NCBI RefSeq assembly: GCF_036365525.1
Contig: NC_090387.1
Coordinates: 76,693,300-76,757,299, forward strand
Source of the DNA: Heterodontus francisci
Taxonomy: Eukaryota
Length of the DNA stretch: 64,000 nucleotides
Direction of reading: 5' to 3'
The position numbers were made by a program, and so were the translations under genes. The notes below the pieces were generated by a model. That model was not told where the DNA came from and did no database searches. It saw only the letters and a program-made list of their open reading frames with translations. Each line of letters starts with the position of its first letter. The first letter of the stretch is position 1. Below, one piece after another: positions 3,693 to 43,870 of this stretch.

Positions 3693-5711
3693 TTTCTTTC
3701 TTTCTTTCTTTGGCCTCCTTGTCTCGAGAGACAATGGGTAAGCGCCTGGAGGTGGTCAGTGGTTTGTGGAGCAGCGCCTGGAGTGGCTATAAAAGCCAAT
3801 TCTAGAGTGACAGGCTCTTCCACAGGTGTTGCAGAAAAATTTGTTTGTCGGGGCTGTTACACAGTTGGCTCTCCCTTTGTGCTTCTGTCTTTTTTCCTGC
3901 CAACTGCTAAGACTCTTCGACTAGCCACACTTTAGCCCCGCCTTTATGGCTGCCTGCCAGCTCTGGCGATCACTGGCGATCGCTGGCAGCTGACTCCCAC
4001 GACTTGTGATCAATGTCACCGGACTTCATGTTGCGTTTGCAGACGTCTTTAAAGCAGAGACATGGACAGCCGGTGGGTCTGATACCACTGGCGAGCACGC
4101 TGTACAATGTGTCTTTGGGGTTCCTGCCATCTTCCATGCGGCTCACATGGCCAAGCCATCTCAAGCGCCGCTGACTCAGTCGTGTGTATAAGCTGGGGAT
4201 CTTGGCCGCCTCGAGGACTTCTGTGTTGGAGATACGGTCCTGCCACCTGATGCCAAGTATTCTCCGGAGGCAACGAAGATGGAATAAATTGAGACATCGC
4301 TCTTGGCTGACATACATTGTCCAGGCCTCGCTGCCATAAGAGCAAGGTACTGAGGACACAGGCTTGATACACTCGGACTTTTGTGTTCCGTGTCAGTGCG
4401 CCATTTTCCCACACTCTCTTGGCCAGTCTGGACATAGCAGTGGAAGCCTTTCCCATGCGCTTGTTAATTTCTGCATCTAGAGACAGGTTACTGGTGATAG
4501 TTGAGCCTAGGTAGGTGAACTCTTGAACCATTTCCAGAGCGTGGTCACCGATATTGATGGATGGAGCATTTCTGACGTCCTGTCCCATGATGTTCATTTT
4601 CTTGAGGCTGATGGTGAGGCCAAATTCGTTGCAGGCAGCCGCAAACCTGTCGATGAGACTCTGCAGACACTCTTCAGTGTGAGATGTTAAAGCAGCATCG
4701 TCAGCAAAGAGGAGTTCCCTGATGAGGACTTTCCGTACTTTGGTCTTCGCTCTTAGATGGGCAGGGTTGAACAACCTGCCACCTGATCTTATGTGGAGGA
4801 AAATTCCTTCTTCTGAAGACTTGAACGCATGTGAGAGCAGCAGGGAGAAGAAAACCCCAAACAGTGTCGGTGCGAGAACCCAGCCCCATTTCACGCCACT
4901 CAGGATAGGAAAGGGGTCTGATAAGGTGCCGCGATGCTGAATTGTGCCTTTCATATTGTCATGGAATGAGGTGATGATACTTAGTAACTTTGGTCGACAT
5001 CCGATCTTTTCTAGTAGTCTGAAGAGACCACGTCTGCTGACGAGGTCAAAGGCTTTGGTGAAATCAATGAAAGCAATGTAGAGAGGCATCTGTTGTTCGT
5101 GGCATTTCTCCTGTATCTGACGAAGGGAGAACAGCATGTCAATGGTCGATCTCTCTGCACGAAAGCCACACTGTGCCAGAAGCTTGGCCAGCTTCTGGAG
5201 CCTGTTTAAGGCGACTCGAGCAAAGACTTTCCCCACTATGCTGAGCAGGGAGATTTCACGGTAGTTGTTGCAGTCACCACGGTCACCTTTGTTTTTATAG
5301 AGGGTGATGATATTGGCATCGCACATGTCCTGAGGTACTGCTCCCTCGTCCCAGCACAGGCAAAGCAGTTCATGTAGTGCTGAGAGTATAGCAGGCTTGG
5401 CACTCTTGATTATTTCAGGGGTAATGCTGTCCTTCCCAGGGGCTTTTCCGCTGGCTAGAGAATCAATGGCATCACTGAGTTCCGATTTTGTTGGCTGTAC
5501 GTCCAGCTCATCCATGACTGGTAGAGGCTGGGCTGCATTGAGGGCAGTCTCAGTGACAACATTCTCCCTGGAGTAAAGTTCTAGGTAGTGCTCAACCCAG
5601 CGGTCCATTTGCTTGCGTTGTGCAGTTCTAGGTAGTGCTCAACCCAGCGGTCCATTTGCTTGCGTTGTGCAGTTCTAGGTAGTGCTCAACCCAGCGGTCC
5701 ATTTGCTTGCG
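3693..5711 (-). mobile_element. 5'-truncated RTE LINE
   Basis: RT ORF 4049-5608 (QCGFR, FIDFTKAFD, LFADD) with a frameshift near 4340; (GAAA)n tail; 10-bp TSD TATGGATACC at 3683-3692 and 5712-5721. Confidence 0.95.
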
Positions 5712-5712
5712 T
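5577..5712. repeat. 47-bp tandem triplication at the RTE 5' truncation point
   Basis: Units start at 5577, 5624 and 5671: AGTTCTAGGTAGTGCTCAACCCAGCGGTCCATTTGCTTGCGT(TGTGC). Confidence 0.95.
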
Positions 5713-10200: not shown

Positions 10201-10385
10201 AGACTCGGAGGGCGGAGTTCCAGAGCAGTGAGTAAATAAAAAAACTTACCTCGGGGATTTCGGAGCAGACTCGTAGGGCGGAGTTCCAGAGCGGTGAGTA
10301 TAAAAAACTTACCTCGGGGATTCTCGGAGCAGATCGGTGAGCGGAGTTCCAGAGCGGTGAGTGAACAGAGTAAGTTACCTCGGGT
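10201..10385 (+). repeat. Three ~63-66 bp tandem monomers at the CR1 5' end
   Basis: Units start at ~10201, 10267 and 10330: AGACTCG.AGGGCGGAGTTCCAGAGC.GTGAGT...ACTTACCTCGGG. Confidence 0.85.
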
Positions 10386-10971: not shown

Positions 10972-13900
10972 GTTTTCTTTTCTTTTCTTCTTTTGGGCCT
11001 CCTTATCTCGAGAGACAATGGATACGCGCCTGGAGGTGGTCAGTGGTTTGTGAAGCAGCGCCTGGAGTGGCTATAAAGGCCTATTCTGGAGTGACAGGCT
11101 CTTCCACAGGTGCTGCAGAGAAATTTGTTTGTCGGGGCTGTTGCACAGTTGGCTCTCCCCTTGCGCCTCTGTCTTTTTTCCTGCCAACTACTAAGTCTCT
11201 TCGACTCGCCACAATTTAGCCTTGTCTTTATGGCTGCCCGCCAGCTCTGGCGAATGCTGGCAACTGACTCCCACGACTTGTGATCAATGTCACACGATTT
11301 CATGTCGCGTTTGCAGACGTCTTTATAGCGGAGACATGGACGGCCGGTGGGTCTGATACCAGTGGCGAGCTCGCTGTACAATGTGTCTTTGGGGATCCTG
11401 CCATCTTCCATGCGGCTCACATGGCCAAGCCATCTCAAGCGCCGCTGACTCAGTAGTGTGTATAAGCTGGGGGTGTTGGCCGCTTCAAGGACTTCTGTGT
11501 TGGAGATATAGTCCTGCCACCTGATGCCAAGTATTCTCCGAAGGCAGCGAAGATGGAATGAATTGAGACGTCGCTCTTGGCTGGCATACATTGTCCAGGC
11601 CTCGCTGCCGTAGAGCAAGGTACTGAGGACACAGGCCTGATACACTCGGAGTTTTGTGTTCCGTGTCAGTGCGCCATTTTCCCACACTCTCTTGTCCAGT
11701 CTGGACATAGCAGTGGAAGCCTTACCCATGCGCTTGTTGATTTCTGCATCTAGAGACAGGTTACTGGTGATAGTTGAGCCTAGGTAGGTGAACTCTTGAA
11801 CCATTTCCAGAGCGTGGTCGCCAATATTGATGGATGGAGCATTTCTGACGTCCTGCCCCATGATGTTCGTTTTCTTGAGGCTGATGGTTAGGCCAAATTC
11901 ATTGCAGGCAGACGCAAACCTGTCGATGAGACTCTGCAGGCACTCTTCAGTGTGAGATGCTAAAGCAGCATCATCAGCAAAGAGGAGTTCTCTGATGAGG
12001 ACTTTCCGTACTTTGGACTTCGCTCTTAGACGGGCAAGGTTGAACAACCTGCCCCCTGATCTTGTGTGGAGGAAAATTCCTTCTTCAGAGGATTTGAACG
12101 CATGTGAAAGCAGCAGGGAGAAGAAAATCCCAAAAAGTGTGGGTGCGAGAACACAGCCCTGTTTCACACCACTCAGGATAGGAAAGGGCTCTGATGAGGA
12201 GCCACCATGTTGAATTGTGCCTTTCATATTGTCATGGAATGAGGTGATGATACTTAGTAACTTTGGTCGACATCCGATCTTTTCTAGTAGTCTGAAGAGA
12301 CCACGTCTGCTGACGAGGTCAAAGGCTTTGGTGAAATCAATGAAAGCAATGTAGAGAGGCATCTGTTGTTCGTGGCATTTCTCCTGTATCTGACGAAGGG
12401 AGAACAGCATGTCAATGGTCGATCTCTCTGCACGAAAGCCACACTGTGCCTCAGGGTAGACGCGCTCGGCCAGCTTCTGGAGCCTGTTCAGAGAGACTCG
12501 AGCAAAGACTTTCCCCACTATGCTGAGCAGGGAGATTCCACGGTAGTTGTTGCAGTCACCGCGGTCACCTTTGTTTTTATAGAGGGTGATGATGTTGGCA
12601 TCGCGCATGTCCTGGGGTACTGCTCCCTCGTCCCAGCACAGGCATAGCAGTTCATGTAGTGCTGAGAGTATAGCAGGCTTGGCACTCTTGATTATTTCAG
12701 GGGTAATGCTGTCCTTCCCAGGGGCTTTTCTGCTGGCTAGGGAATCAATGGCATCACTGAGTTCCGATTTGGTTGGCTGTATGTCCAGCTCATCCATGAC
12801 TGGTAGAGGCTGGGCTGCATTGAGGGCAGTCTCAGTGACAGCATTCTCCCTGGAGTACAGTTCTAGGTAGTGCTCAACCCAGCAGTCCATCTGTTTGCGT
12901 TGGTCAGTGATTATGTCCCCCGATTTAGATTTGAGGGGGGCGATCTTCTTGATGGTTGGCCCAAGAGCTCTCTTCATGCCATCATACATTCCTCTGATGT
13001 TTCTGGTGTCTGAGGCCAGCTGAATATGACTGCATAGGTGTTGCCAGTAGTCGTTTGCGCAACGCCTAGCTGTTCTTTGTGCAGTACTTCTGGCTGCTTT
13101 AAGTGCTGCGGATGTTAAATCGCTGTGGGCTTTCTTGTAGTTCAACAGTGCAATGCGCTTAGCGACTATGACAGGTTCCAGCTCTTCATTATGAGATTGA
13201 AACCAGTCTGCATTTCTCTTCGCACTTTTGCCGTAGGTGGTCAAAGCTGACTCATAGATGGCGTCTCTGATGTGGGCCCACTTGGTCTCAGCATCCCCTG
13301 TGGGAGTGTTTTGAAGGGCTGTTACAAGTGAATTTAGAAATTTTTGTAACAGCTGTGGGTGAGAAATTCTGCTCGTGTTGATGCGCGGGTGGCCCTTCTG
13401 CTTGGAATGATGCAACTTCTTTGGTCTGAGTCTAACCTTGCTGCACACCAGGGAGTGGTCGGTGTCGCAGTCCGCACTGTGGAAGCTGCGTGTGATTTGA
13501 ACACTGTTTAAGGCGGCTCGCCTTGTGACAATGAGGTCTAGCTGGTGCCAACGACGTGATCTTGGGTGCCTCCATGAAACCTGGTGACAGGGTTTAGTGT
13601 GAAAGAACGAGTTGGTGATGCAGAGGTTATGATAGGTACACAACTCAAGCAGTCTCTGCCCGTTCTCATTCATCCTTCCAACGCCATAGCGCCCAAGGCA
13701 GGAGGGCCATGAGTCATGGTCGGCCCCAACCCTGGCATTAAAGTCCCCCAGCAGGAATAGGTGTTCGGTGTTGGGGATGCTGCTAATGATGTTATGGAGT
13801 TGTTCATAGAACTGGTCTTTAGCTTCAGGTGGGGAGCAGAGTGTTGGAGCATAGATGCTGAGTAGGTGTACTGGACCAGAGGTGGTGAGCAGTCGGATGG

Positions 13901-22999: not shown

Positions 23000-23500
23000 A
23001 TTAAATATCATGCTGGAAATGTAAATTGTTGAATATTAGATGCAAATGCATAAGGTAAGGATACAGGCACGCTTGGAAAAGAACTTGGAACTTAATAGTA
23101 GAGTTGCTTCCTTCATTGTCTACGCAAGGAGGGGGAACAATTGATAAACTGAATGGACATATAGCCAGATCATTGGAGTGCAAATATGCAGAGATTGTAC
23201 TGATGCTTCATAATTGTCTGGTCAAACCACACTTGGGCTACTCTGTACAATTGTGATCAACATTCCACAAAATAAAATGCACTTGCATTGGGTGCAGAAC
23301 AGAGTATAAAGGATGATTTCAGATATTAAAGAAAGGTTAGAAGAGCCCAAGCTGTAGGTTTGGGAGAGGGGAAATGTTCCGTATAGATAAGGTAAATTCA
23401 AAATATTGCTTAGAGTTAATTTAGGCTAGTGGGGCCAGGTTACATTAGAGTAAATTGGTAAACATTGATATTTACTCAAAGCGTGATAAAGATTTAGATA
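23000..23500 (+). mobile_element. Very old CR1 fragment (target of the Penelope insertion; continues at ~25250)
   Basis: Degenerate GTCAAACCACACTTGG.CTAC (VRPHLEY-like). Confidence 0.45.
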
Positions 23501-23596
23501 AAAGCAAAATACTGCGGATGCTGGAAATCTGAAACAAAAACAAGAAATGCTGGATTCACTCAGCAGGTCTGGCAGCATCTGTGGAAAGAGAAGCAG

Positions 23597-23633
23597 AGTT
23601 AACGTTTCGGGTCAGTGACCCTTCTTCGGAACT
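23597..23633 (-). ncRNA. Minimal type I hammerhead ribozyme (pLTR)
   Basis: Reverse complement reads AGUU-CCGAAGA-A-GGGUC-ACU-GACCC-GAAAC-GUU-AACU. Confidence 0.8.
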
Positions 23634-24227
23634 GACAAATATTAGAAAAGTCACAGATTATAAACAAGTGAGGTGGGGGTTGGGCAAGAGATAACAAAGG
23701 AGAAGGTGCAGATTGGACCAGGCCACATAGCTGACCAAAAGGTCACGGAGCAAAGGCAAACAATATGTTAATGGTGTGTTGAAAGACAAAGCATTAGTAC
23801 AGATTAGGTGTGAATATACTGAATATTGAACATCAGCAAGTGCAAACCTGAAGAAAAACAACCTGAAAAAAACAGTGGGTAAGCAAACTGAACAAACTAA
23901 GATGAAATGAAATAAATGCAAAAAAAGATTGTAAAAAATGTAAAAAGGAATGCAAAAAAAAGGAAGAAAAAATAACTAAAAATGACTAAAAATGAAAGTA
24001 AAGTGGGGGGCTGTCATGCTCTGAAATTATTGAACTCAATGTTCAGTCCGGCAGGCTGTAGTGTGCCTAATCGGTAGATGAGATGCCGTTCCTCGAGCTT
24101 GCGTTGATGTTCACTGGAACACTGCAGCAATCCCAGGACAGAGATGTGAGCATGAGAGCAGGGGGGAGTGTTGAAATGGCAAGCAACCGGAAGCTCAGGG
24201 TCCTGCTTGCGGACTGAGCGGAGATGT

Positions 24228-24752
24228 CGCATCTTCCCCTCCCTTCCCCTGTCAGCATTCCGAAGGGATCGTTCCCTCCGCGACACCCTGGTCCACTCCT
24301 CCATTACCCCCACCACCTCGTCCCCATCCCAGGGCACCTTCCCTTGCAATCGCAGGAGGTGTAATACCTGCCCATTTACCTCCTCTCTCCTCACTATCCC
24401 AGGCCCCAAACACTCCTTTCAGGTGAAGCAGCGATTTACTTGTACTTCTTTCAATGTAGTATACTGTATTCGCTGCTCACAGTGTGGTCTCCTCTACATT
24501 GGGGAGACCAAGCGCAGACTGGGTGACCGCTTTGCGGAACATCTCCGCTCAGTCCGCAAGCAGGACCCTGAGCTTCCGGTTGCTTGCCATTTCAACAGTC
24601 CCCCCTGCTCTCATGCTCACATCTCTGTCCTGGGATTGCTGCAGTGTTCCAGTGAACATCAACGCAAGCTCGAGGAACAGCATCTCATCTACCGATTAGG
24701 CACACTACAGCCTGCCGGACTGAACATTGAGTTCAATAATTTCAGAGCATGA
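24228..24752 (+). pseudogene. Penelope ORF C-terminus: Cys linker and GIY-YIG endonuclease (5'-truncated)
   Basis: CNRRRCNTC, NVVYCIRCSQCGLLYIGETKRRLGDRFAEH, GLN. Confidence 0.93.
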
Positions 24753-25132
24753 CAGCCCCCCACTTTACTTTCATTTTTAGTCATTTTTAGTTATTTTTTC
24801 TTCCTTTTTTTTGCATTCCTTTTTACATTTTTTACAATCTTTTTTTGCATTTATTTCATTTCATCTTAGTTTGTTCAGTTTGCTTACCCACTGTTTTTTT
24901 CAGGTTGTTTTTCTTCAGGTTTGCACTTGCTGATGTTCAATATTCAGTATATTCACACCTAATCTGTACTAATGCTTTGTCTTTCAACACACCATTAACA
25001 TATTGTTTGCCTTTGCTCCGTGACCTTTTGGTCAGCTATGTGGCCTGGTCCAATCTGCACCTTCTCCTTTGTTATCTCTTGCCCAACCCCCACCTCACTT
25101 GTTTATAATCTGTGACTTTTCTAATATTTGTC

Positions 25133-25169
25133 AGTTCCGAAGAAGGGTCACTGACCCGAAACGTTAACT
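25133..25169 (+). ncRNA. Minimal type I hammerhead ribozyme (pLTR)
   Basis: AGTTCCGAAGAAGGGTCACTGACCCGAAACGTTAACT. Confidence 0.8.
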
Positions 25170-25909
25170 CTGCTTCTCTTTCCACAGATGCTGCCAGACC
25201 TGCTGAGTGAATCCAGCATTTCTTGTTTTTGATAAAGATTTAGATAATCTGCAAAAGTTCAAATGCAAGAGGACGTTAGGCTGGATCAGCTAGGACTGTG
25301 AAAGAATGAGTCATAATCTTTTCTTGTCCTTAACGATTATGGGATTTTTTTGGCACTAGTTCCGTCATATTAAACCATTCATTTAAATTATATGATTTGA
25401 ACCGTAAATTTTATATGGAAATTGGGAGCAGCGGTAGGCCCCAAATTACAAAGAAGCTCAAAACTCTCCTTAACTGCAACAGGGATGTGAAGGACCAGAC
25501 TGTCTTTTTCTCATCCTGACTTTCTAATATTCCTGTGTACTATTTTGTTTCACGTTCATGTAAGCATTCTTTATATCTGATGAATATTAAACATTTCGTA
25601 TGTCTACAACGTGCTGGTGGGGAACCTGGCTAGCAAGGATCTCATGGATTGTGAGGCATGTGTGTTATTTTTATAAGCATTATACTGCAATAAATTAACT
25701 TGCACTATGACCATTGCTACCCGGTCCCGTTGTTTTCTCAATTGACACAGAAAATAAAATCATATTAGGATTTGAAAGGTGTTCAGGCAAATCGCAGCTG
25801 ATTTTACCAGTAGAAAGCTAATGGAATTTAAGTTTTTGTAAATCACAAAATATATACAATATACATATATATATATATATACATATATATATATTATACA
25901 TAGGCATAT

Positions 25910-38486: not shown

Positions 38487-38891
38487 CTGTGTGTGTGCAC
38501 GAGCGAAGGCGAGGGAGACAAAGAGAAACAAAAGAGAGTGTGGGACAAAATCAGAGAGAAATAGCGGCATGAGGACTACAGATACAGATATAAGAGATCA
38601 TATTTTCTGACATGTGCTGTGCAAAACAATGGGAAATTGACCAATTCGTGTAAAATTGTAAAGCTTTGGTAAGACTGCAACATACCCAGTTGATTGAAAT
38701 CAATGGGTAATATTGTAAAAGTAACAGTAACACTTGTTATCTTCCAATTCCTCCAATGGAGGGCACTGCATTCTAATAAAACAGTTGTGAAAGAACTTGT
38801 ATAATACTGCGGATGCTGGAAATCTGAAACAAAAACAAGAAATGCTGGATTCACTCAGCAGGTCTGGCAGCATCTGTGGAAAGAGAAGCAG

Positions 38892-38928
38892 AGTTAACGT
38901 TTCGGGTCAGTGACCCTTCTTCGGAACT
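38892..38928 (-). ncRNA. Minimal hammerhead ribozyme, array copy 1
   Basis: Identical to 23597-23633. Confidence 0.8.
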
Positions 38929-39136
38929 GACAAATATTAGAAAAGTCACAGATTATAAAATCCCGTCGGAGAGAAGAGCAGAACTTCTTCAAGGTAGGCA
39001 TTCCTGGAAGAGAAGTGGCAGTGAATTAAACACTAAAATAAAAGCAAAATACTGCGGATGCTGGAAATCTGAAACAAAAACAAGAAATGCTGGATTCACT
39101 CAGCAGGTCTGGCAGCATCTGTGGAAAGAGAAGCAG

Positions 39137-39173
39137 AGTTAACGTTTCGGGTCAGTGACCCTTCTTCGGAACT
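39137..39173 (-). ncRNA. Minimal hammerhead ribozyme, array copy 2
   Basis: 245 bp from copy 1. Confidence 0.8.
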
Positions 39174-39514
39174 GACAAATATTAGAAAAGTCACAGATTA
39201 TAAAATCCCGTCGGAGAGAAGAGCAGAACTTCTTCAAGGTAGGCATTCCTGGAAGAGAAGTGGCAGTGAATTAAACACTAAAATAAAAGCAAAATACTGC
39301 GGATGCTGGAAATCTGAAACAAAAACAAGAAACAAAGACAAGAGTGAATCCAGCATTTCTTGTTTTTGTTTCAGATTTCCAGCATCCGCAGTATTTTGCT
39401 TTTATTTTAGTGTTTAATTCACTGCCACTTCTCTTCCAGGAATGCCTACCTTGAAGAAGTTCTGCTCTTCTCTCCGACGGGATTTTATAATCTGTGACTT
39501 TTCTAATATTTGTC

Positions 39515-39551
39515 AGTTCCGAAGAAGGGTCACTGACCCGAAACGTTAACT
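39515..39551 (+). ncRNA. Minimal hammerhead ribozyme, array copy 3
   Basis: Identical to 25133-25169. Confidence 0.8.
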
Positions 39552-39759
39552 CTGCTTCTCTTTCCACAGATGCTGCCAGACCTGCTGAGTGAATCCAGCA
39601 TTTCTTGTTTTTGTTTCAGATTTCCAGCATCCGCAGTATTTTGCTTTTATTTTAGTGTTTAATTCACTGCCACTTCTCTTCCAGGAATGCCTACCTTGAA
39701 GAAGTTCTGCTCTTCTCTCCGACGGGATTTTATAATCTGTGACTTTTCTAATATTTGTC

Positions 39760-39796
39760 AGTTCCGAAGAAGGGTCACTGACCCGAAACGTTAACT
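39760..39796 (+). ncRNA. Minimal hammerhead ribozyme, array copy 4
   Basis: 245 bp from copy 3. Confidence 0.8.
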
Positions 39797-39885
39797 CTGC
39801 TTCTCTTTCCACAGATGCTGCCAGACCTGCTGAGTGAATCCAGCATTTCTTGTTTTTGTGTGTGAAAGAACTTGTGCTGTTTCTA

Positions 39886-40020
39886 TAATAAAAGCAAAAT
39901 CCAGCAGATGCTGGAAATCTGAAATAAAAACAGAAAGTACTGGAAATACTCAGTAGGTCAGGCAGCATCTGTGGAGGGAGATGAGTTAATATTTCAGGTC
40001 TGCGACCTTTCATCAGAGCC
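39886..40020 (-). mobile_element. Older solo Penelope pLTR with a canonical-core hammerhead (39983-40019)
   Basis: Reverse complement reads CUGAUGA-A-AGGUC-GCA-GACCU-GAAAUAUUAACUC. Confidence 0.75.
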
Positions 40021-40817
40021 CTGATCAGCTCTTGGAAAATACTGTGGAATTCGGAAGTTATGCTTCCAAGGATAAATAACACTAGATATCTGCCAGTTAA
40101 AATTCATTCAAATACAAATTACAGTTACTTTATAAAGTAACATTTTGGGATACAGAATGTGGGTAACTTGAGTCATGACGTGTGTTACCTATAGCATGCT
40201 TGGGAGGAATAGGTGACTTTGGACCTATGGTTCCCAAAGCTGTCCACCATGTGGTTTTCCTTACGTTAGGACTGTTCTGAACTGCTTGATAGAGACTGAT
40301 TGCCATGATTAGTCAACAACTCCATTATCATGGTTTCATGCAACTACCAGGATATAGAAGGTGGATTAGATGGACCGTCTTCTGTTCATCCAACAATTCC
40401 TACATTCCTATCTAAATAATCAATTAAGTCGTAGGATTGACATCTAATACCAATTGATTGAAATTCATGTAACATTTGAATTTTTCTTTATTTCATATAT
40501 CTTGTAGATATAAATATTGCCTCCTCCAATTACCGAATCCCTCACATTGTGGTGGGTTCACTGGCAATCTTAACGCTGCTACTGATCCTTGCTGATCATG
40601 TGATATTACGTAGTTGTACAGGTAAGACTCACTGTTTTGCTTATGTACATATATACACTAATCAAATAAAAAAAAAAGCTTAGAAAGGGGAACTAGATGT
40701 TATTTATCAGAGACAGATGTCCTCGTATCATTAGAATTGTGGAAATGGATGGGATTTTTCAAATAAATCTCAGACGGAAATCAATGCTGCAGAGCTGGTA
40801 GATGCAAGTTATTCTGT

Positions 40818-42399: not shown

Positions 42400-43870
42400 A
42401 AAGCAGGGCACTTAGAAAAATTGAAGGTAATCAGGCAGAGTCAACATGGTTTTGTTAAAGGGAAATCATGTTTAACCAATTTATTGGAGTTCTTTGTGGA
42501 TGAAAGGGAAACCGGTGGATGTATTGTACTTAGATTTCTAGAAGGCATTTGACAAGGTGCCACATCAAAGGTTGTTGCAAATAAATAAAAGCTCATGGTG
42601 TACAGGATAACATATTGGCATGGAAGAAGATTGGCTAGCTAACAGGAAACAGAGAGTAGGCATAAATGGATCATTTTTTCTGGTTGGCAAGATGTAACAA
42701 GTGGTGTGCCACAGGCATCTGAGCTGGGGCCTCACCTTTTTGCAATTTATATACACGACATGGAAGAAGGGACCAAAGGTATAGTTGCTAAATTTGTTGA
42801 TGGCACAAACATAGGCAGGAAATTATGTTGTGAAGAGGACATAAGGAAGCTGCAAAGGGAGATAGATAGTTAAGTGAGTGGGCAAAAATCTGGCAGCTGG
42901 CGTATAATGTGGGAAAATGTGAAGTTGTCCATTTTGGCAGGAAGAATAGCAAAGAAGCTTATTATCTAAATGATGAGAGATTGCAGAGCTTTGAAATGCA
43001 GAGGGATCTGGGTGTCCTAGTGCATGAATCACAAAAGGTGAGTATGCAGGTACAGCACGCAATTAGGAAAGCTATTAGAATGTTATTATAATAAAAGCAA
43101 AATACTGCGGATGCTGGAAATCTGAAATAAAAACAAGAAATGCTGGAATCACTCAGCAGGTCTGGCAGCATCTGTGGAAAGAGAAGCAGAGTTAACGTTT
43201 CGGGTCAGTGACCCTTCTTCGGATATTAGAATGTTATTGTTTATCGTGAGGGGAATTGAATGCAAAAGTAGGGAGGTTATGCTTCAGCTATAGAGGACAT
43301 TGGTGAGACAACATCTGGAGTACTGTGTGCAGTATTGGTCTCCTTATTTAAGGAAGGATGTAAATGCAGTTGGAAGCAGTTCAAAGAAGGTTTATTAGAC
43401 TGACACTTAGAGTAGGCAGGCTATCTTATGAGGAAAGATTGGATAAGCTAGGCTTTTATCCACTGGAATTTAGATGAGTAAGGGGCGACTTGATTGAAAC
43501 ATATAACATCCTGAGGGGTCTTGACGGGGTGGATGTAGAAAGGATGTTTGCCCTTGTGGGAGAATCTAGAACCGAGATCACCATTTAAAAATAAGGGGTC
43601 CCCTATTTAAGACAGAGATGAGGAGAACTTCTTTTCTCTCAGATTATCATGAGTCTTTGGCCCCCTCTTCCTCAAAAGGTGGTTGAAGTAGAGTCTTTGA
43701 ATATGTTTTAATCAGAGTTGGATAGATTCTTGATTAACAAGGGGATGAAAGGCTATCAGGGGTGGGTGGTAATGTGGAGAAATCAGTTCAGCCATGAACT
43801 TATTGAGTGGCGGAGCAGGCTTGAAGAGCTGAATGGCCTACTCCTGCTCATTATTAGTCTGTTCGTATGT
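42400..43870 (+). mobile_element. 5'-truncated CR1
   Basis: QHGFVKGKSCLTNLLEFF, CEVVHFG, 3'UTR. Confidence 0.9.
43088..43223 (-). mobile_element. 136-bp solo Penelope pLTR with hammerhead core (43190-43223)
   Basis: 15-bp TSD TATTAGAATGTTATT at 43073-43087 and 43224-43238. Confidence 0.9.

What the first reader, a model, noticed from the sequence alone, without database searches (positions are those of the whole stretch)
38786..39875. Retrozyme-like palindromic array of 245-bp hammerhead units derived from a Penelope element
Seen: a single insertion (15-bp TSD) of ~2.2 identical 245-bp units in one orientation and ~2.1 in the other, with four identical hammerheads and no RT or endonuclease coding. 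Each unit is the pLTR of the Neptune element at 23.5-25.2 kb plus ~80 bp that ends in a polypyrimidine-CAG and ATG (MPTLKKFCSSLRRDF, ATG at 39442), then rejoins the 3'UTR at the microhomology TTTATAATC. Known: Penelope minimal hammerheads have a palindromic stem III and act as dimers; non-LTR retrozymes are short tandem hammerhead repeats that yield circular RNAs. Inference: an internal deletion of a pLTR-ORF-pLTR element created a hammerhead-to-hammerhead unit that could self-cleave to 245-nt monomers, circularise and be copied as multimers by the Penelope RT. This would be a retrozyme caught at its origin.
Basis: partly seen in the sequence, partly recalled or inferred. Interest (0 to 1): 0.85.

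Follow-up and report, generated by a model that had tools for sequence, protein, structure and literature searches.

The report
Deleted Penelope element inserted as palindromic multimers
A very young, 1.06-kb insertion in a shark genome consists of 245-bp units of an internally deleted Penelope-like (Neptune) retrotransposon, laid down head-to-tail and head-to-head as Penelope elements usually are; it illustrates how "animal retrozymes" derive from these elements, but RNA circles, ribozyme activity and copy number were not shown.

Summary
A perfect 15-bp target-site duplication (38786-38800 / 39861-39875) flanks 2.16 antisense and 2.11 sense copies of one 245-bp unit. All copies are identical and meet head-to-head across a 9-nt filler. 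Of the unit, 163 nt match the 3' end of the Neptune copy at 23.5-25.2 kb exactly. The other ~82 nt look like the element's 5' leader and start codon.

- The palindrome-plus-tandem layout is the standard Penelope insertion layout, not a retrozyme feature. The coding Neptune copy 15 kb away has the same layout.
- The hammerhead matches the Penelope minimal type except at core position 4, where it has C instead of the conserved U. Rfam gives no hammerhead hit.
- No arm end lies at the predicted cleavage site. The two arms are nearly equal in length, which weakly favours a linear template of fixed length.
- Public runs were available only as contigs. They could not show junction copy number, a unit-length RNA or circles.

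That animal retrozymes derive from Penelope terminal repeats was already proposed (NAR 2020; bioRxiv 2026). First-stage notes of this scan report similar Penelope hammerhead insertions elsewhere in this genome.

Verdict: a real, recent, non-autonomous Neptune deletion derivative mobilised by Penelope machinery. It is a new member of a known kind, of moderate interest.

The parts
38786..38800 (.). Left copy of the 15-bp target-site duplication TGTGAAAGAACTTGT
   Evidence: family D5, 100% identical, spacing 1075
38803..39332 (-). Left arm: 2.16 antisense copies of the 245-bp unit. Its element 3' end reaches 26 nt further into the unit than the right arm's, forming a one-sided 'tail'. Two odd bases AT lie at 38801-38802.
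   Evidence: TRF period 245, 2.2 copies, 100% matches
38892..38928 (-). Hammerhead-like motif 1 (minus strand), identical to the motif at 39515-39551; predicted cut between 38896 and 38895
   Evidence: read; mirror image of 39760-39796 (pair I1)
39137..39173 (-). Hammerhead-like motif 2 (minus strand); predicted cut between 39141 and 39140
   Evidence: read; mirror image of 39515-39551 (pair I1)
39333..39341 (.). 9-nt filler CAAAGACAA joining the 5' ends of the two arms
   Evidence: covered by X1 contigs only, depth about 23-35 (table 4)
39342..39859 (+). Right arm: 2.11 sense copies of the 245-bp unit (39342-39586, 39587-39831, 39832-39859)
   Evidence: TRF period 245, 2.1 copies, 100% matches
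39402..39483 (+). About 82 nt found nowhere else in the window: a pyrimidine tract ending in CAG, then ATG (39442) and 14 codons, MPTLKKFCSSLRRD. Taken as the 5' leader and ORF start of the full-length Neptune element. Repeated at 39647-39728.
   Evidence: no other copy in the window; P0047, a 924-aa PLE protein, carries MPTLKSVCS... near its start; P0056 starts MPSLKK; records 11 and 19 (contigs carrying this piece stop matching at 39483/39485 and run on into sequence unlike the unit)
39484..39586 (+). Start of the part identical to the Neptune 3'UTR / terminal repeat. The deletion junction lies at 39483|39484 (also 39728|39729, and mirrored at 39204/39205 and 38959/38960).
   Evidence: 163/163 identical to 23502-23664; loose ends at 39484/39485, whose consensus ...CCACCTCACTTG(C) resembles the Neptune 3'UTR just upstream of this point
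39515..39551 (+). Hammerhead-like motif 3. Helix I AGUU/AACU; core C3 C4 G5 A6 A7 G8 A9 (39519-39525); extra A 39526; helix II GGGUC-ACU-GACCC (39527-39539); GAA 39540-39542; palindrome ACGU 39543-39546; U17 39547; predicted cut 39547|39548.
   Evidence: read; features compared with PMC4209133; no Rfam hit
39760..39796 (+). Hammerhead-like motif 4, identical to motif 3; predicted cut 39792|39793
39861..39875 (.). Right copy of the 15-bp target-site duplication
   Evidence: D5
23484..25247 (+). Comparator copy of the autonomous family. A 5'-truncated Neptune copy inserted as a head-to-head palindrome with an 18-bp TSD TGATAAAGATTTAGATAA. The sense arm carries the CX5CxxC linker and the GIY-YIG endonuclease end of the ORF. 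The antisense arm carries a one-sided ~33-nt tail.
43090..43224 (-). Solo 5'-truncated copy of the same terminal repeat (98% identical) with its own 14-bp TSD ATTAGAATGTTATT. It begins at hammerhead core position C3.

Best explanation
This is one recent retrotransposition event of a non-autonomous, internally deleted Neptune-clade Penelope-like element (PLE).

The unit. The 245-nt unit keeps the terminal repeat, which carries the minimal hammerhead motif. It also keeps about 82 nt of 5' leader with the first 14 codons. The RT-EN ORF and most of the 3'UTR are gone.

The template (inferred). All 4.3 copies on both arms share the same deletion junction, so a deleted template RNA existed before this insertion.

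The insertion (inferred). A Neptune RT/GIY-YIG endonuclease supplied in trans nicked both target strands 15 bp apart. Each 3'-OH primed a cDNA at a slightly different point near the template's 3' end. That explains the different arm ends and the one-sided tail. Each cDNA ran through two units and stopped at almost the same template position (39342 and 39356). The two cDNA ends were then joined across a 9-nt filler, which gives the head-to-head palindrome.

The head-to-tail multimers. They come either from RT jumping between RNAs that share terminal redundancy, which is the mechanism thought to make PLE pseudo-LTRs, or from a more-than-unit transcript of a tandem master copy.

Shown here: the anatomy, the identity to the Neptune copy, the TSD, and the same end geometry in the coding copy.

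Inferred: twin priming, supply of the enzymes in trans, and a linear template.
For: - Perfect 15-bp TSD and perfectly identical units and arms.
- 163/163 identity to the Neptune copy at 23502-23664.
- That copy encodes the CNRRRCNTC linker and GIY-YIG end of a PLE ORF. It has 7289 phmmer hits at E<=0.001, including 800-920-aa PLE proteins.
- That copy has the same architecture: an 18-bp TSD, about 693-nt inverted arms, and an antisense arm about 33 nt longer at its 3' end.
- In both insertions the inverted arm contains element sequence that the sense arm lacks. So it cannot be a snap-back copy of the sense arm.
- PMC8557442 describes PLE insertions as partial tandems, often with an adjacent inverted 5'-truncated copy and a 30-40-bp tail at one end. 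It also describes non-autonomous PLEs that give multicopy head-to-tail insertions.
- PMC4209133 reports pairs of minimal hammerheads 100-700 bp apart on opposite strands.
- The arms are 518 and 530 nt, and their 5' ends lie 14 nt apart.
- No arm end lies at the predicted cleavage site 39547|39548.
- In runs X5 and X11, contigs carrying the 82-nt piece leave the unit at 39483/39485, as expected if normal copies run on into the ORF (records 11 and 19).
Against: - No second locus with the junction was found, so a family is not demonstrated. The window holds only this array, two JGI metagenome scans were blank and uninformative, and the contig data could not resolve the question.
- No full-length Neptune copy was available, so the origin of the 82-nt piece rests on a short N-terminal resemblance (MPTLK..CS) and on contig behaviour.
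- The near-coincidence of the two arm 5' ends has roughly a 1 in 10 chance under random stops, so it only weakly favours a linear template.
- A circular template is not excluded.
Confidence: 0.65

Rival explanations
1. True retrozyme cycle. A transcript with two hammerheads self-cleaves to a 245-nt monomer. A host ligase circularises it, and the Neptune RT copies the circle by rolling-circle reverse transcription. That yields the 2.1-2.2-unit multimers on each arm.
For: - Two or more consecutive units each carry a type I minimal hammerhead-like motif with the palindromic ACGU that allows dimeric action (PMC4209133).
- Unit size 245 bp, GC 41.6%, no coding capacity and a TSD longer than 4 bp all fit non-LTR retrozymes (PMC7229834).
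- Circular templates were proposed in 2014 to explain PLE head-to-tail tandems (PMC4209133).
- All copies are identical, as expected from a single small template.
Against: - Core position 4 is C, not U. U4C considerably lowers activity in vitro (PMC3088659), and PLE minimal hammerheads are already weak even as dimers or trimers (PMC4209133).
- No Rfam hammerhead hit at E<=10.
- No arm end lies at the cleavage or ligation site.
- Both arms stop within 14 nt of each other after the same number of rounds, which a circle does not predict.
- The coding, non-tandem Neptune copy shows the same insertion geometry without any small circle.
- The monomer RNA folds no better than shuffles (z = -0.51).
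- In the presumed RNA run X5, summed contig depth over the unit-specific 82 nt is 70-88, against up to 1.5 million over the shared repeat. This is weak evidence: the data are contigs and the library type is unknown.
Confidence: 0.2
2. One-off event with no pre-existing deleted template. The RT copied full-length Neptune RNA and made the same internal template switch, from the 3'UTR to the ORF start, in every round.
For: The junction is seen only in this array within the window. PLE RTs are thought to switch templates readily when they form pseudo-LTRs (PMC8557442).
Against: The identical junction would have to form independently four times, on two separately primed cDNAs.
Confidence: 0.05
3. 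DNA-level rearrangement after a simple insertion: tandem duplication by slippage or unequal exchange, followed by a fold-back duplication.
For: Li et al. (bioRxiv 10.64898/2026.07.22.740005) propose local amplification as one way in which retrozyme arrays grow.
Against: - The TSD flanks the whole structure.
- There are zero differences among the 4.3 copies.
- The inverted arm holds 26 nt of element sequence that is absent from the sense arm's end.
- The same geometry occurs in the non-tandem Neptune copy.
Confidence: 0.05
4. Assembly artefact: a chimeric palindromic long read, or a collapsed repeat.
For: Perfect palindromes and perfect tandem copies are classic artefact shapes. PLE structures are known to trouble assemblies (PMC8557442).
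Against: - An artefact would not create a perfect 15-bp TSD.
- Read-derived contigs of X1 cover the unique centre filler at single-locus depth (table 4). X1 may be the sample the assembly was made from, so this is not independent.
- A second insertion in the window has the same geometry.
Confidence: 0.04

Closest known systems
Penelope-like element insertions, Neptune clade (Arkhipova 2006; Craig et al. 2021, PMC8557442)
   Same: - TSD of variable length.
- Head-to-tail partial tandems (pseudo-LTRs).
- An adjacent inverted 5'-truncated copy.
- A one-sided tail of a few tens of bp.
- A minimal hammerhead in the terminal repeat.
- 100% identity to a coding copy 15 kb away.
   Different: There is no RT or EN. 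The body between the terminal repeats is reduced to about 82 nt, so the 'partial tandem' becomes a run of 245-bp units.
Non-autonomous PLE derivatives, e.g. MRC1 and other non-autonomous Chlamys elements of Chlamydomonas (PMC8557442)
   Same: - Share the 3' end with an autonomous family.
- Produce pseudo-LTRs and multicopy head-to-tail insertions.
- Mobilised in trans.
   Different: - Different PLE clade and host: a vertebrate Neptune element.
- Carries a hammerhead motif.
- Retains the parent's start codon.
- Copy number is unknown here.
Metazoan non-LTR retrozymes (Cervera & de la Pena 2020, PMC7229834; Li, Clavereau & Pollet 2026, bioRxiv 10.64898/2026.07.22.740005)
   Same: - Short non-coding tandem units in the 170-400 bp range.
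- Low GC.
- One type I hammerhead-like motif per unit.
- A long TSD.
- Proposed derivation from PLE terminal repeats.
   Different: - The hammerhead is the PLE minimal type, without loop-loop contacts, and has C at core position 4.
- Only about 2 units per arm.
- Head-to-head palindrome.
- No evidence yet of unit-length linear or circular RNA, or of a multi-copy family.
L1 twin priming (Ostertag & Kazazian 2001; from my own knowledge)
   Same: Both staggered nicks prime reverse transcription, and the two cDNAs are joined in the middle. This gives an inverted structure inside one TSD.
   Different: L1 twin priming copies different parts of one RNA, which gives an inversion without duplication. 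Here both cDNAs copy the same region, which gives a true palindrome.

Membership tests
Non-autonomous derivative of a Neptune-clade Penelope-like element | Sequence identity with the terminal (3') part of an autonomous PLE | tested here: met
   163/163 nt identical to 23502-23664
Non-autonomous derivative of a Neptune-clade Penelope-like element | The parent encodes a PLE GIY-YIG endonuclease with the CX2-5CxxC linker of Neptune/Nematis | tested here: met
   - CNRRRCNTC lies upstream of YIGETKRRLGDRFAEH.
- Pfam GIY-YIG E=2.4e-4, 21.8 bits, just under the 22.6 cutoff.
- phmmer best E=7e-63, with hits to 800-920-aa PLE proteins.
- The RT part is absent from this truncated copy.
Non-autonomous derivative of a Neptune-clade Penelope-like element | PLE insertion signature: TSD, tandem/inverted copies, one-sided tail | tested here: met
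   - 15-bp TSD.
- 2.1-2.2-unit tandems.
- 504-nt perfect inverted arms.
- 26-nt longer antisense arm.
- Same signature in the coding copy, as described in PMC8557442.
Non-autonomous derivative of a Neptune-clade Penelope-like element | No RT/EN coding capacity of its own | tested here: met
   The only ORF in a unit starting from the ATG is 35 aa and has no Pfam hit.
Non-autonomous derivative of a Neptune-clade Penelope-like element | Several independent insertions that share the deletion junction (a family) | tested here: inconclusive
   - The junction occurs only inside this array in the window.
- The contig-only read data could not count it.
- The metagenome scans were blank and uninformative.
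PLE minimal hammerhead (Cervera & de la Pena 2014) | Catalytic boxes CUGANGA and GAAA | tested here: not met
   - GAAA is present.
- The first box reads CCGAAGA, with C at position 4 (39520).
- C is the majority state among contigs at least 90% alike in four runs from three organisms; T makes up 11-30% of the depth (table 3).
PLE minimal hammerhead (Cervera & de la Pena 2014) | Extra nucleotide between 9 and 10.1; G10.1-C11.1 pair; palindromic 15.2-16.2; short helix I | tested here: met
   - Extra A at 39526.
- G39527-C39539 pair.
- ACGU at 39543-39546.
- Helix I AGUU/AACU, 4 bp.
- The older copy at 39883-40030 has A10.1-U11.1 and AUAU, changes that keep both the pair and the palindrome.
PLE minimal hammerhead (Cervera & de la Pena 2014) | Self-cleavage | not testable with these tools
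   Needs in vitro transcription of a dimer. No Rfam model matches.
Metazoan non-LTR retrozyme (Cervera & de la Pena 2020) | Tandem non-coding repeats of about 170-400 bp, low GC, TSD longer than 4 bp when present | tested here: met
   245 bp; 41.6% GC; 15-bp TSD
Metazoan non-LTR retrozyme (Cervera & de la Pena 2020) | Canonical type I hammerhead with loop 1-loop 2 tertiary contacts in each unit | tested here: not met
   The motif is the PLE minimal type, with an open 4-bp helix I and C at position 4. Under the looser definition of Li et al. 2026, minimal models count, but a motif search that requires the catalytic boxes would probably still miss it.
Metazoan non-LTR retrozyme (Cervera & de la Pena 2020) | Expressed as unit-length linear and circular RNAs | tested here: inconclusive
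   Only Logan contigs were available, and the RNA label of X5 and X11 is a guess. Depth over the unit-specific 82 nt is low in X5 (70-88). No starts or ends can be read from contigs.

The most novel reading that the evidence does not exclude
The array is one of the first insertions of a newborn vertebrate retrozyme. A 245-nt hammerhead-to-hammerhead RNA, still 100% identical to its Neptune parent and still carrying the parent's start codon, is cleaved despite the C4 core, circularised, and copied as multimers by the Neptune RT. This would show the step from autonomous PLE to retrozyme directly. It would also show that retrozyme multimers are laid down by target-primed reverse transcription (a TSD around the whole multimer) and not by local DNA amplification.
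Probability: 0.15. Interest if true: 0.7.

Novelty: new member of a known kind. Interest (0 to 1): 0.4.

Why it matters
How animal hammerhead tandem repeats ("non-LTR retrozymes") arise and move is still argued from phylogeny and co-occurrence with Penelope-like elements.

- **Unusually clean specimen.** Every base is assignable. The parent family lies 15 kb away and is 100% identical over the shared part.
- **Multimers arrived by retrotransposition.** A single TSD surrounds several units. The multimers therefore arrived in one retrotransposition event with Penelope end geometry, not by later unequal crossing-over.
- **A caution about the ribozyme.** This young, evidently mobile family carries C at a conserved hammerhead core position. 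Either the ribozyme tolerates it or cleavage is not needed for mobility. That bears on the open question of what Penelope hammerheads are for.

Tried and rejected
- **Rfam.** The whole window at gathering threshold gave nothing. The array at E<=10 gave only spurious miRNA and snoRNA-like hits caused by the long hairpin, and no hammerhead family. Rfam models do not capture PLE minimal hammerheads, because the canonical-core old copy at 39883-40030 also gave no hit.
- **My own regex scan.** I scanned for C[TC]GANGA...GAAA with a paired helix II. I then read the motif by hand.
- **Sequencing runs and read laying.** All runs were Logan contigs. The shared terminal repeat is so abundant (summed depths in the millions) that the tables are dominated by other copies. 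Junction copy number, RNA ends and circles could not be read. To avoid handing a long repeat to the tool, I laid only 39200-39650.
- **Junction and 5' piece in JGI metagenome contigs.** There were 0 matches. This is uninformative for a shark.
- **The search of earlier findings by sequence.** It was blank.
- **Full-length Neptune 5' end.** The phmmer search with the 176-aa endonuclease end found only relatives at 68% identity or less. The exact parent N-terminus was not recovered, only a resemblance (MPTLK..CS in P0047; MPSLKK in P0056).
- **Splicing as the origin of the junction.** I rejected this. The 3'UTR side ends ...CACTTG|TTTATAATC, with no AG acceptor.
- **Snap-back copying as the origin of the palindrome.** I rejected this. 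In both insertions the inverted arm holds element sequence absent from the sense arm.
- **Energy of the textbook double-hammerhead dimer.** It could not be evaluated, because that structure cannot be written without crossing pairs.
- **Fold of the 245-nt monomer.** It is unremarkable, z = -0.51.
Full report
**1. What is there**

- A perfect 15-bp direct repeat, TGTGAAAGAACTTGT, lies at 38786-38800 and 39861-39875.
- Between the two copies lie 530 nt of antisense units (38803-39332; period 245, 2.2 copies, 100% matches), then a 9-nt filler CAAAGACAA (39333-39341), then 518 nt of sense units (39342-39859; 2.1 copies, 100% matches).
- The arms 38829-39332 and 39356-39859 are 504 nt long and 100% complementary.
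None is expected by chance.
- The window has no N.
- Contigs of public run X1 cover the unique centre filler at depth about 23-35. Runs from other organisms do not (table 4). So the centre of the palindrome also exists in read-derived data. X1 may be the sample the assembly came from, so this is not independent support.

**2. What the unit is made of**

BLAST of the unit against the window shows that 163 nt are 100% identical to 23502-23664. These 163 nt run from 39484 through the unit boundary to about 39401 of the next unit.

The region 23484-25247 is a copy of a Penelope-like element.
- Its sense arm encodes the C-terminal part of the ORF, with a CNRRRCNTC motif (CX5CxxC) upstream of YIGETKRRLGDRFAEH.
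- Pfam gives GIY-YIG at E=2.4e-4, just under the curated cutoff.
- phmmer against 1.8 billion representatives gives 7289 hits at E<=0.001, among them 800-920-aa proteins matched at their C-terminal ends.

The remaining ~82 nt (39402-39483) occur nowhere else in the window. They end in a pyrimidine tract and CAG, then ATG at 39442 and 14 codons, MPTLKKFCSSLRRD. Three observations suggest this is the leader and true start of the Neptune ORF.
- A 924-aa PLE protein, P0047, carries MPTLKSVCSQS 24 residues into its predicted sequence. P0056 starts MPSLKK.
- Many copies of the terminal repeat end near ...GCTTTT (around 39403), just where the 82 nt begin (loose ends at 39403/39404 and the mirrored 39285).
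- In runs X5 and X11, contigs that carry the 82-nt piece stop matching at 39483/39485 and run on into unlike sequence (records 11 and 19). Conversely, about 70 X1 contigs match from 39484/39485 onward. Upstream of that point they carry a consensus...CCACCTCACTTG(C), much like the normal Neptune 3'UTR at 25083-25101.

Together this fits an internal deletion from codon 15 to the last ~100 nt of the 3'UTR. Splicing is unlikely, because there is no AG before TTTATAATC.

**3. The hammerhead**

By hand, the motif at 39515-39551 reads as follows.

| Feature | Sequence and position |
|---|---|
| Helix I | AGUU/AACU, 4 bp |
| Core | C3 C4 G5 A6 A7 G8 A9 (39519-39525) |
| Extra base after A9 | A (39526) |
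| Helix II | GGGUC-ACU-GACCC (39527-39539), with a G10.1-C11.1 pair |
| Second box | G12 A13 A14 (39540-39542) |
| Helix III stand-in | palindrome A15.1-C-G-U16.1 (39543-39546) |
| Cleavage | U17 at 39547, cut before A39548 |

Cervera and de la Pena (PMC4209133) list the features that recur in Penelope minimal hammerheads:
- a base between 9 and 10.1
- a G10.1-C11.1 pair
- palindromic 15.2-16.2
- a short helix I

All four are met.

The older, 84%-similar copy at 39883-40030 has CUGAUGA-A-AGGUC...GACCU-GAAAUAUU. There the 10.1-11.1 pair has become A-U and the palindrome has become AUAU. Both changes preserve the structure.

One conserved core position departs: position 4 is C, not U.
- It is the family state, not a defect of this array. 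The Neptune copy and the solo copy at 43090-43224 have it too.
- Among contigs at least 90% alike in four runs from three organisms, T accounts for only 11-30% of the depth at 39520 (table 3).
- C4 and C11.1 both sit in CpGs, so the T variants may be deamination products.
- Perreault et al. (PMC3088659) state that a U4C variant considerably decreases activity in vitro but still permits viroid infectivity. PLE minimal hammerheads are already weak in vitro even as dimers or trimers (PMC4209133).

Rfam finds no hammerhead here at gathering threshold or at E<=10. It also misses the canonical-core old copy, so this says little. "Four identical hammerheads" should therefore read [quoted passage not shown]. 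Their activity is open.

**4. The palindrome and the tandem are Penelope hallmarks**

The Neptune copy at 23484-25247 is itself a single insertion with these features:
- an 18-bp TSD, TGATAAAGATTTAGATAA
- a ~1.0-kb sense arm
- a ~0.72-kb antisense arm
- about 693 nt of inverted identity with two internal mismatches

Its antisense arm reaches about 33 nt further into the element's 3' end than the sense arm. In the array the antisense arm reaches 26 nt further.

Craig et al. [quoted passage not shown] They also describe non-autonomous PLEs that give "multicopy head-to-tail insertions". PMC4209133 noted pairs of minimal hammerheads 100-700 bp apart on opposite strands. So the layout does not single out a retrozyme. 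It says that the Penelope machinery made the insertion.

**5. Mechanism**

In both insertions the inverted arm contains element sequence that the sense arm lacks. It therefore cannot be a snap-back copy of the sense arm's cDNA.

The simplest reading is that both staggered nicks primed reverse transcription on template RNA. Priming started at slightly different points in a ~40-nt zone near the RNA's 3' end (the right ends at ...CTTGTTTTTG(T), the left ends at ...GCAGTATT or ...GCTTTT). The two cDNA 3' ends were then joined, in the array across nine extra bases.

All 4.3 units on two separately primed cDNAs carry the identical deletion junction. A deleted template therefore existed before this event.

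How the multimers arose is not settled. There are three options:
- RT jumping between RNAs with terminal redundancy, the usual explanation for pseudo-LTRs.
- A more-than-unit transcript from a tandem master copy.
- Rolling-circle copying of a 245-nt circle.

Two observations lean, weakly, to a linear template of fixed length.
- Both arms contain the same number of units and stop within 14 nt of each other (39342 and 39356). That has roughly a 1 in 10 chance under random stops.
- None of the four arm ends lies at the predicted cleavage or ligation site. The 5' ends lie 39 and 53 nt short of it.

The 245-nt monomer RNA folds no better than shuffled sequence (-51.6 kcal/mol, z = -0.51).

**6. What I could not establish**

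Every public run offered was held as Logan contigs. I laid four runs on 39200-39650 only, a stretch chosen to avoid handing the tool a long repeat. The terminal repeat is enormously abundant, so the tables mostly reflect other copies. Contigs cannot show RNA ends, strand or level.
- The unit-specific 82 nt are repeated in the DNA run (summed depth about 1e5 in X1). That figure is not a copy number and does not separate full-length Neptune copies from the deletion derivative.
- In the presumed RNA run X5, depth over the 82 nt is only 70-88. The library type is unknown, and small circles would be lost from poly(A) libraries.
- Two metagenome scans were blank, as expected for a shark sequence.

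**7. Comparison with what is known**

[quoted passage not shown] They set these apart from the "atypical minimal" PLE hammerheads.

Li, Clavereau and Pollet (bioRxiv 10.64898/2026.07.22.740005, July 2026) reported the following.
- Vertebrate non-LTR retrozymes, including those of one chondrichthyan, co-occur with PLEs.
- In Xenopus they nest next to PLE pseudo-LTRs in trees.
- The authors concluded that these elements are non-autonomous PLE derivatives.

The circular-template idea for PLE tandems dates from 2014 (PMC4209133).

This locus adds a single, fully resolved example. It is still 100% identical to its parent, retains the parent's start codon, and has one TSD around several units, which points to retrotransposition of multimers and not to local DNA amplification.

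It works like, and is best filed as, a non-autonomous Neptune derivative. It meets the size, composition and tandem criteria of a retrozyme but fails the intact-core criterion. RNA evidence is lacking, so I do not file it as a retrozyme.

Other first-stage notes of this scan report many solo hammerhead-bearing Penelope-end insertions and another Penelope fold-back in the same genome. I verified only the examples in this window.

**8. Verdict**

The array is a real, very recent, Penelope-mobilised deletion derivative and a new member of a known kind. Interest is moderate (0.4). It would rise if the junction proves to be a young multi-copy family with unit-length circular RNA.

Noticed in passing
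window 23484-25247: The two arms of the head-to-head Neptune insertion differ at two internal positions (24168/24598 and 24087/24679). These give S/T and Q/R differences in the endonuclease region. This fits two template RNAs or RT errors. The antisense arm has a ~33-nt tail.
   Followed up: partly
window 43090-43224 (minus strand): A solo 135-bp copy of the same terminal repeat has its own 14-bp TSD ATTAGAATGTTATT. It begins exactly at hammerhead core position C3 (CCGAAGAAGGG...), 29 nt upstream of the predicted cleavage site. Other first-stage notes report many such 'ribozyme-headed' mini-insertions in this genome. A recurrent 5' end at the helix II hairpin would suggest an RT stop and not ribozyme processing.
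   Followed up: partly
window 39883-40030: An older (84%) copy of a related terminal repeat lies in the opposite orientation. Its 3' end is only 7 bp from the array's right TSD. It has a canonical CUGAUGA core, an A10.1-U11.1 pair and an AUAU palindrome, which are compensatory relative to the young family. The proximity may reflect a target preference of the endonuclease, or simply the great abundance of this repeat.
   Followed up: partly
window 39520 and 39539 (and their copies): The non-canonical C4 and C11.1 both sit in CpG dinucleotides. Among related contigs, T replaces them in 11-30% and 26-47% of the depth. Germline CpG deamination would thus turn the family's C4 core into the canonical U4 core after insertion.
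   Followed up: no
window 5037-5063 and 12310-12336: Two identical CTGACGA...GAAA matches from my crude hammerhead regex lie in identical context (cacgtctg...tcaatgaaagca). They probably belong to a duplicated segment and are not ribozymes.
   Followed up: no
window 5577-5712 and 10201-10384: Perfect 47-bp x 2.9 tandem repeat, and an 85%-matching 63-bp x 2.8 tandem repeat.
   Followed up: no
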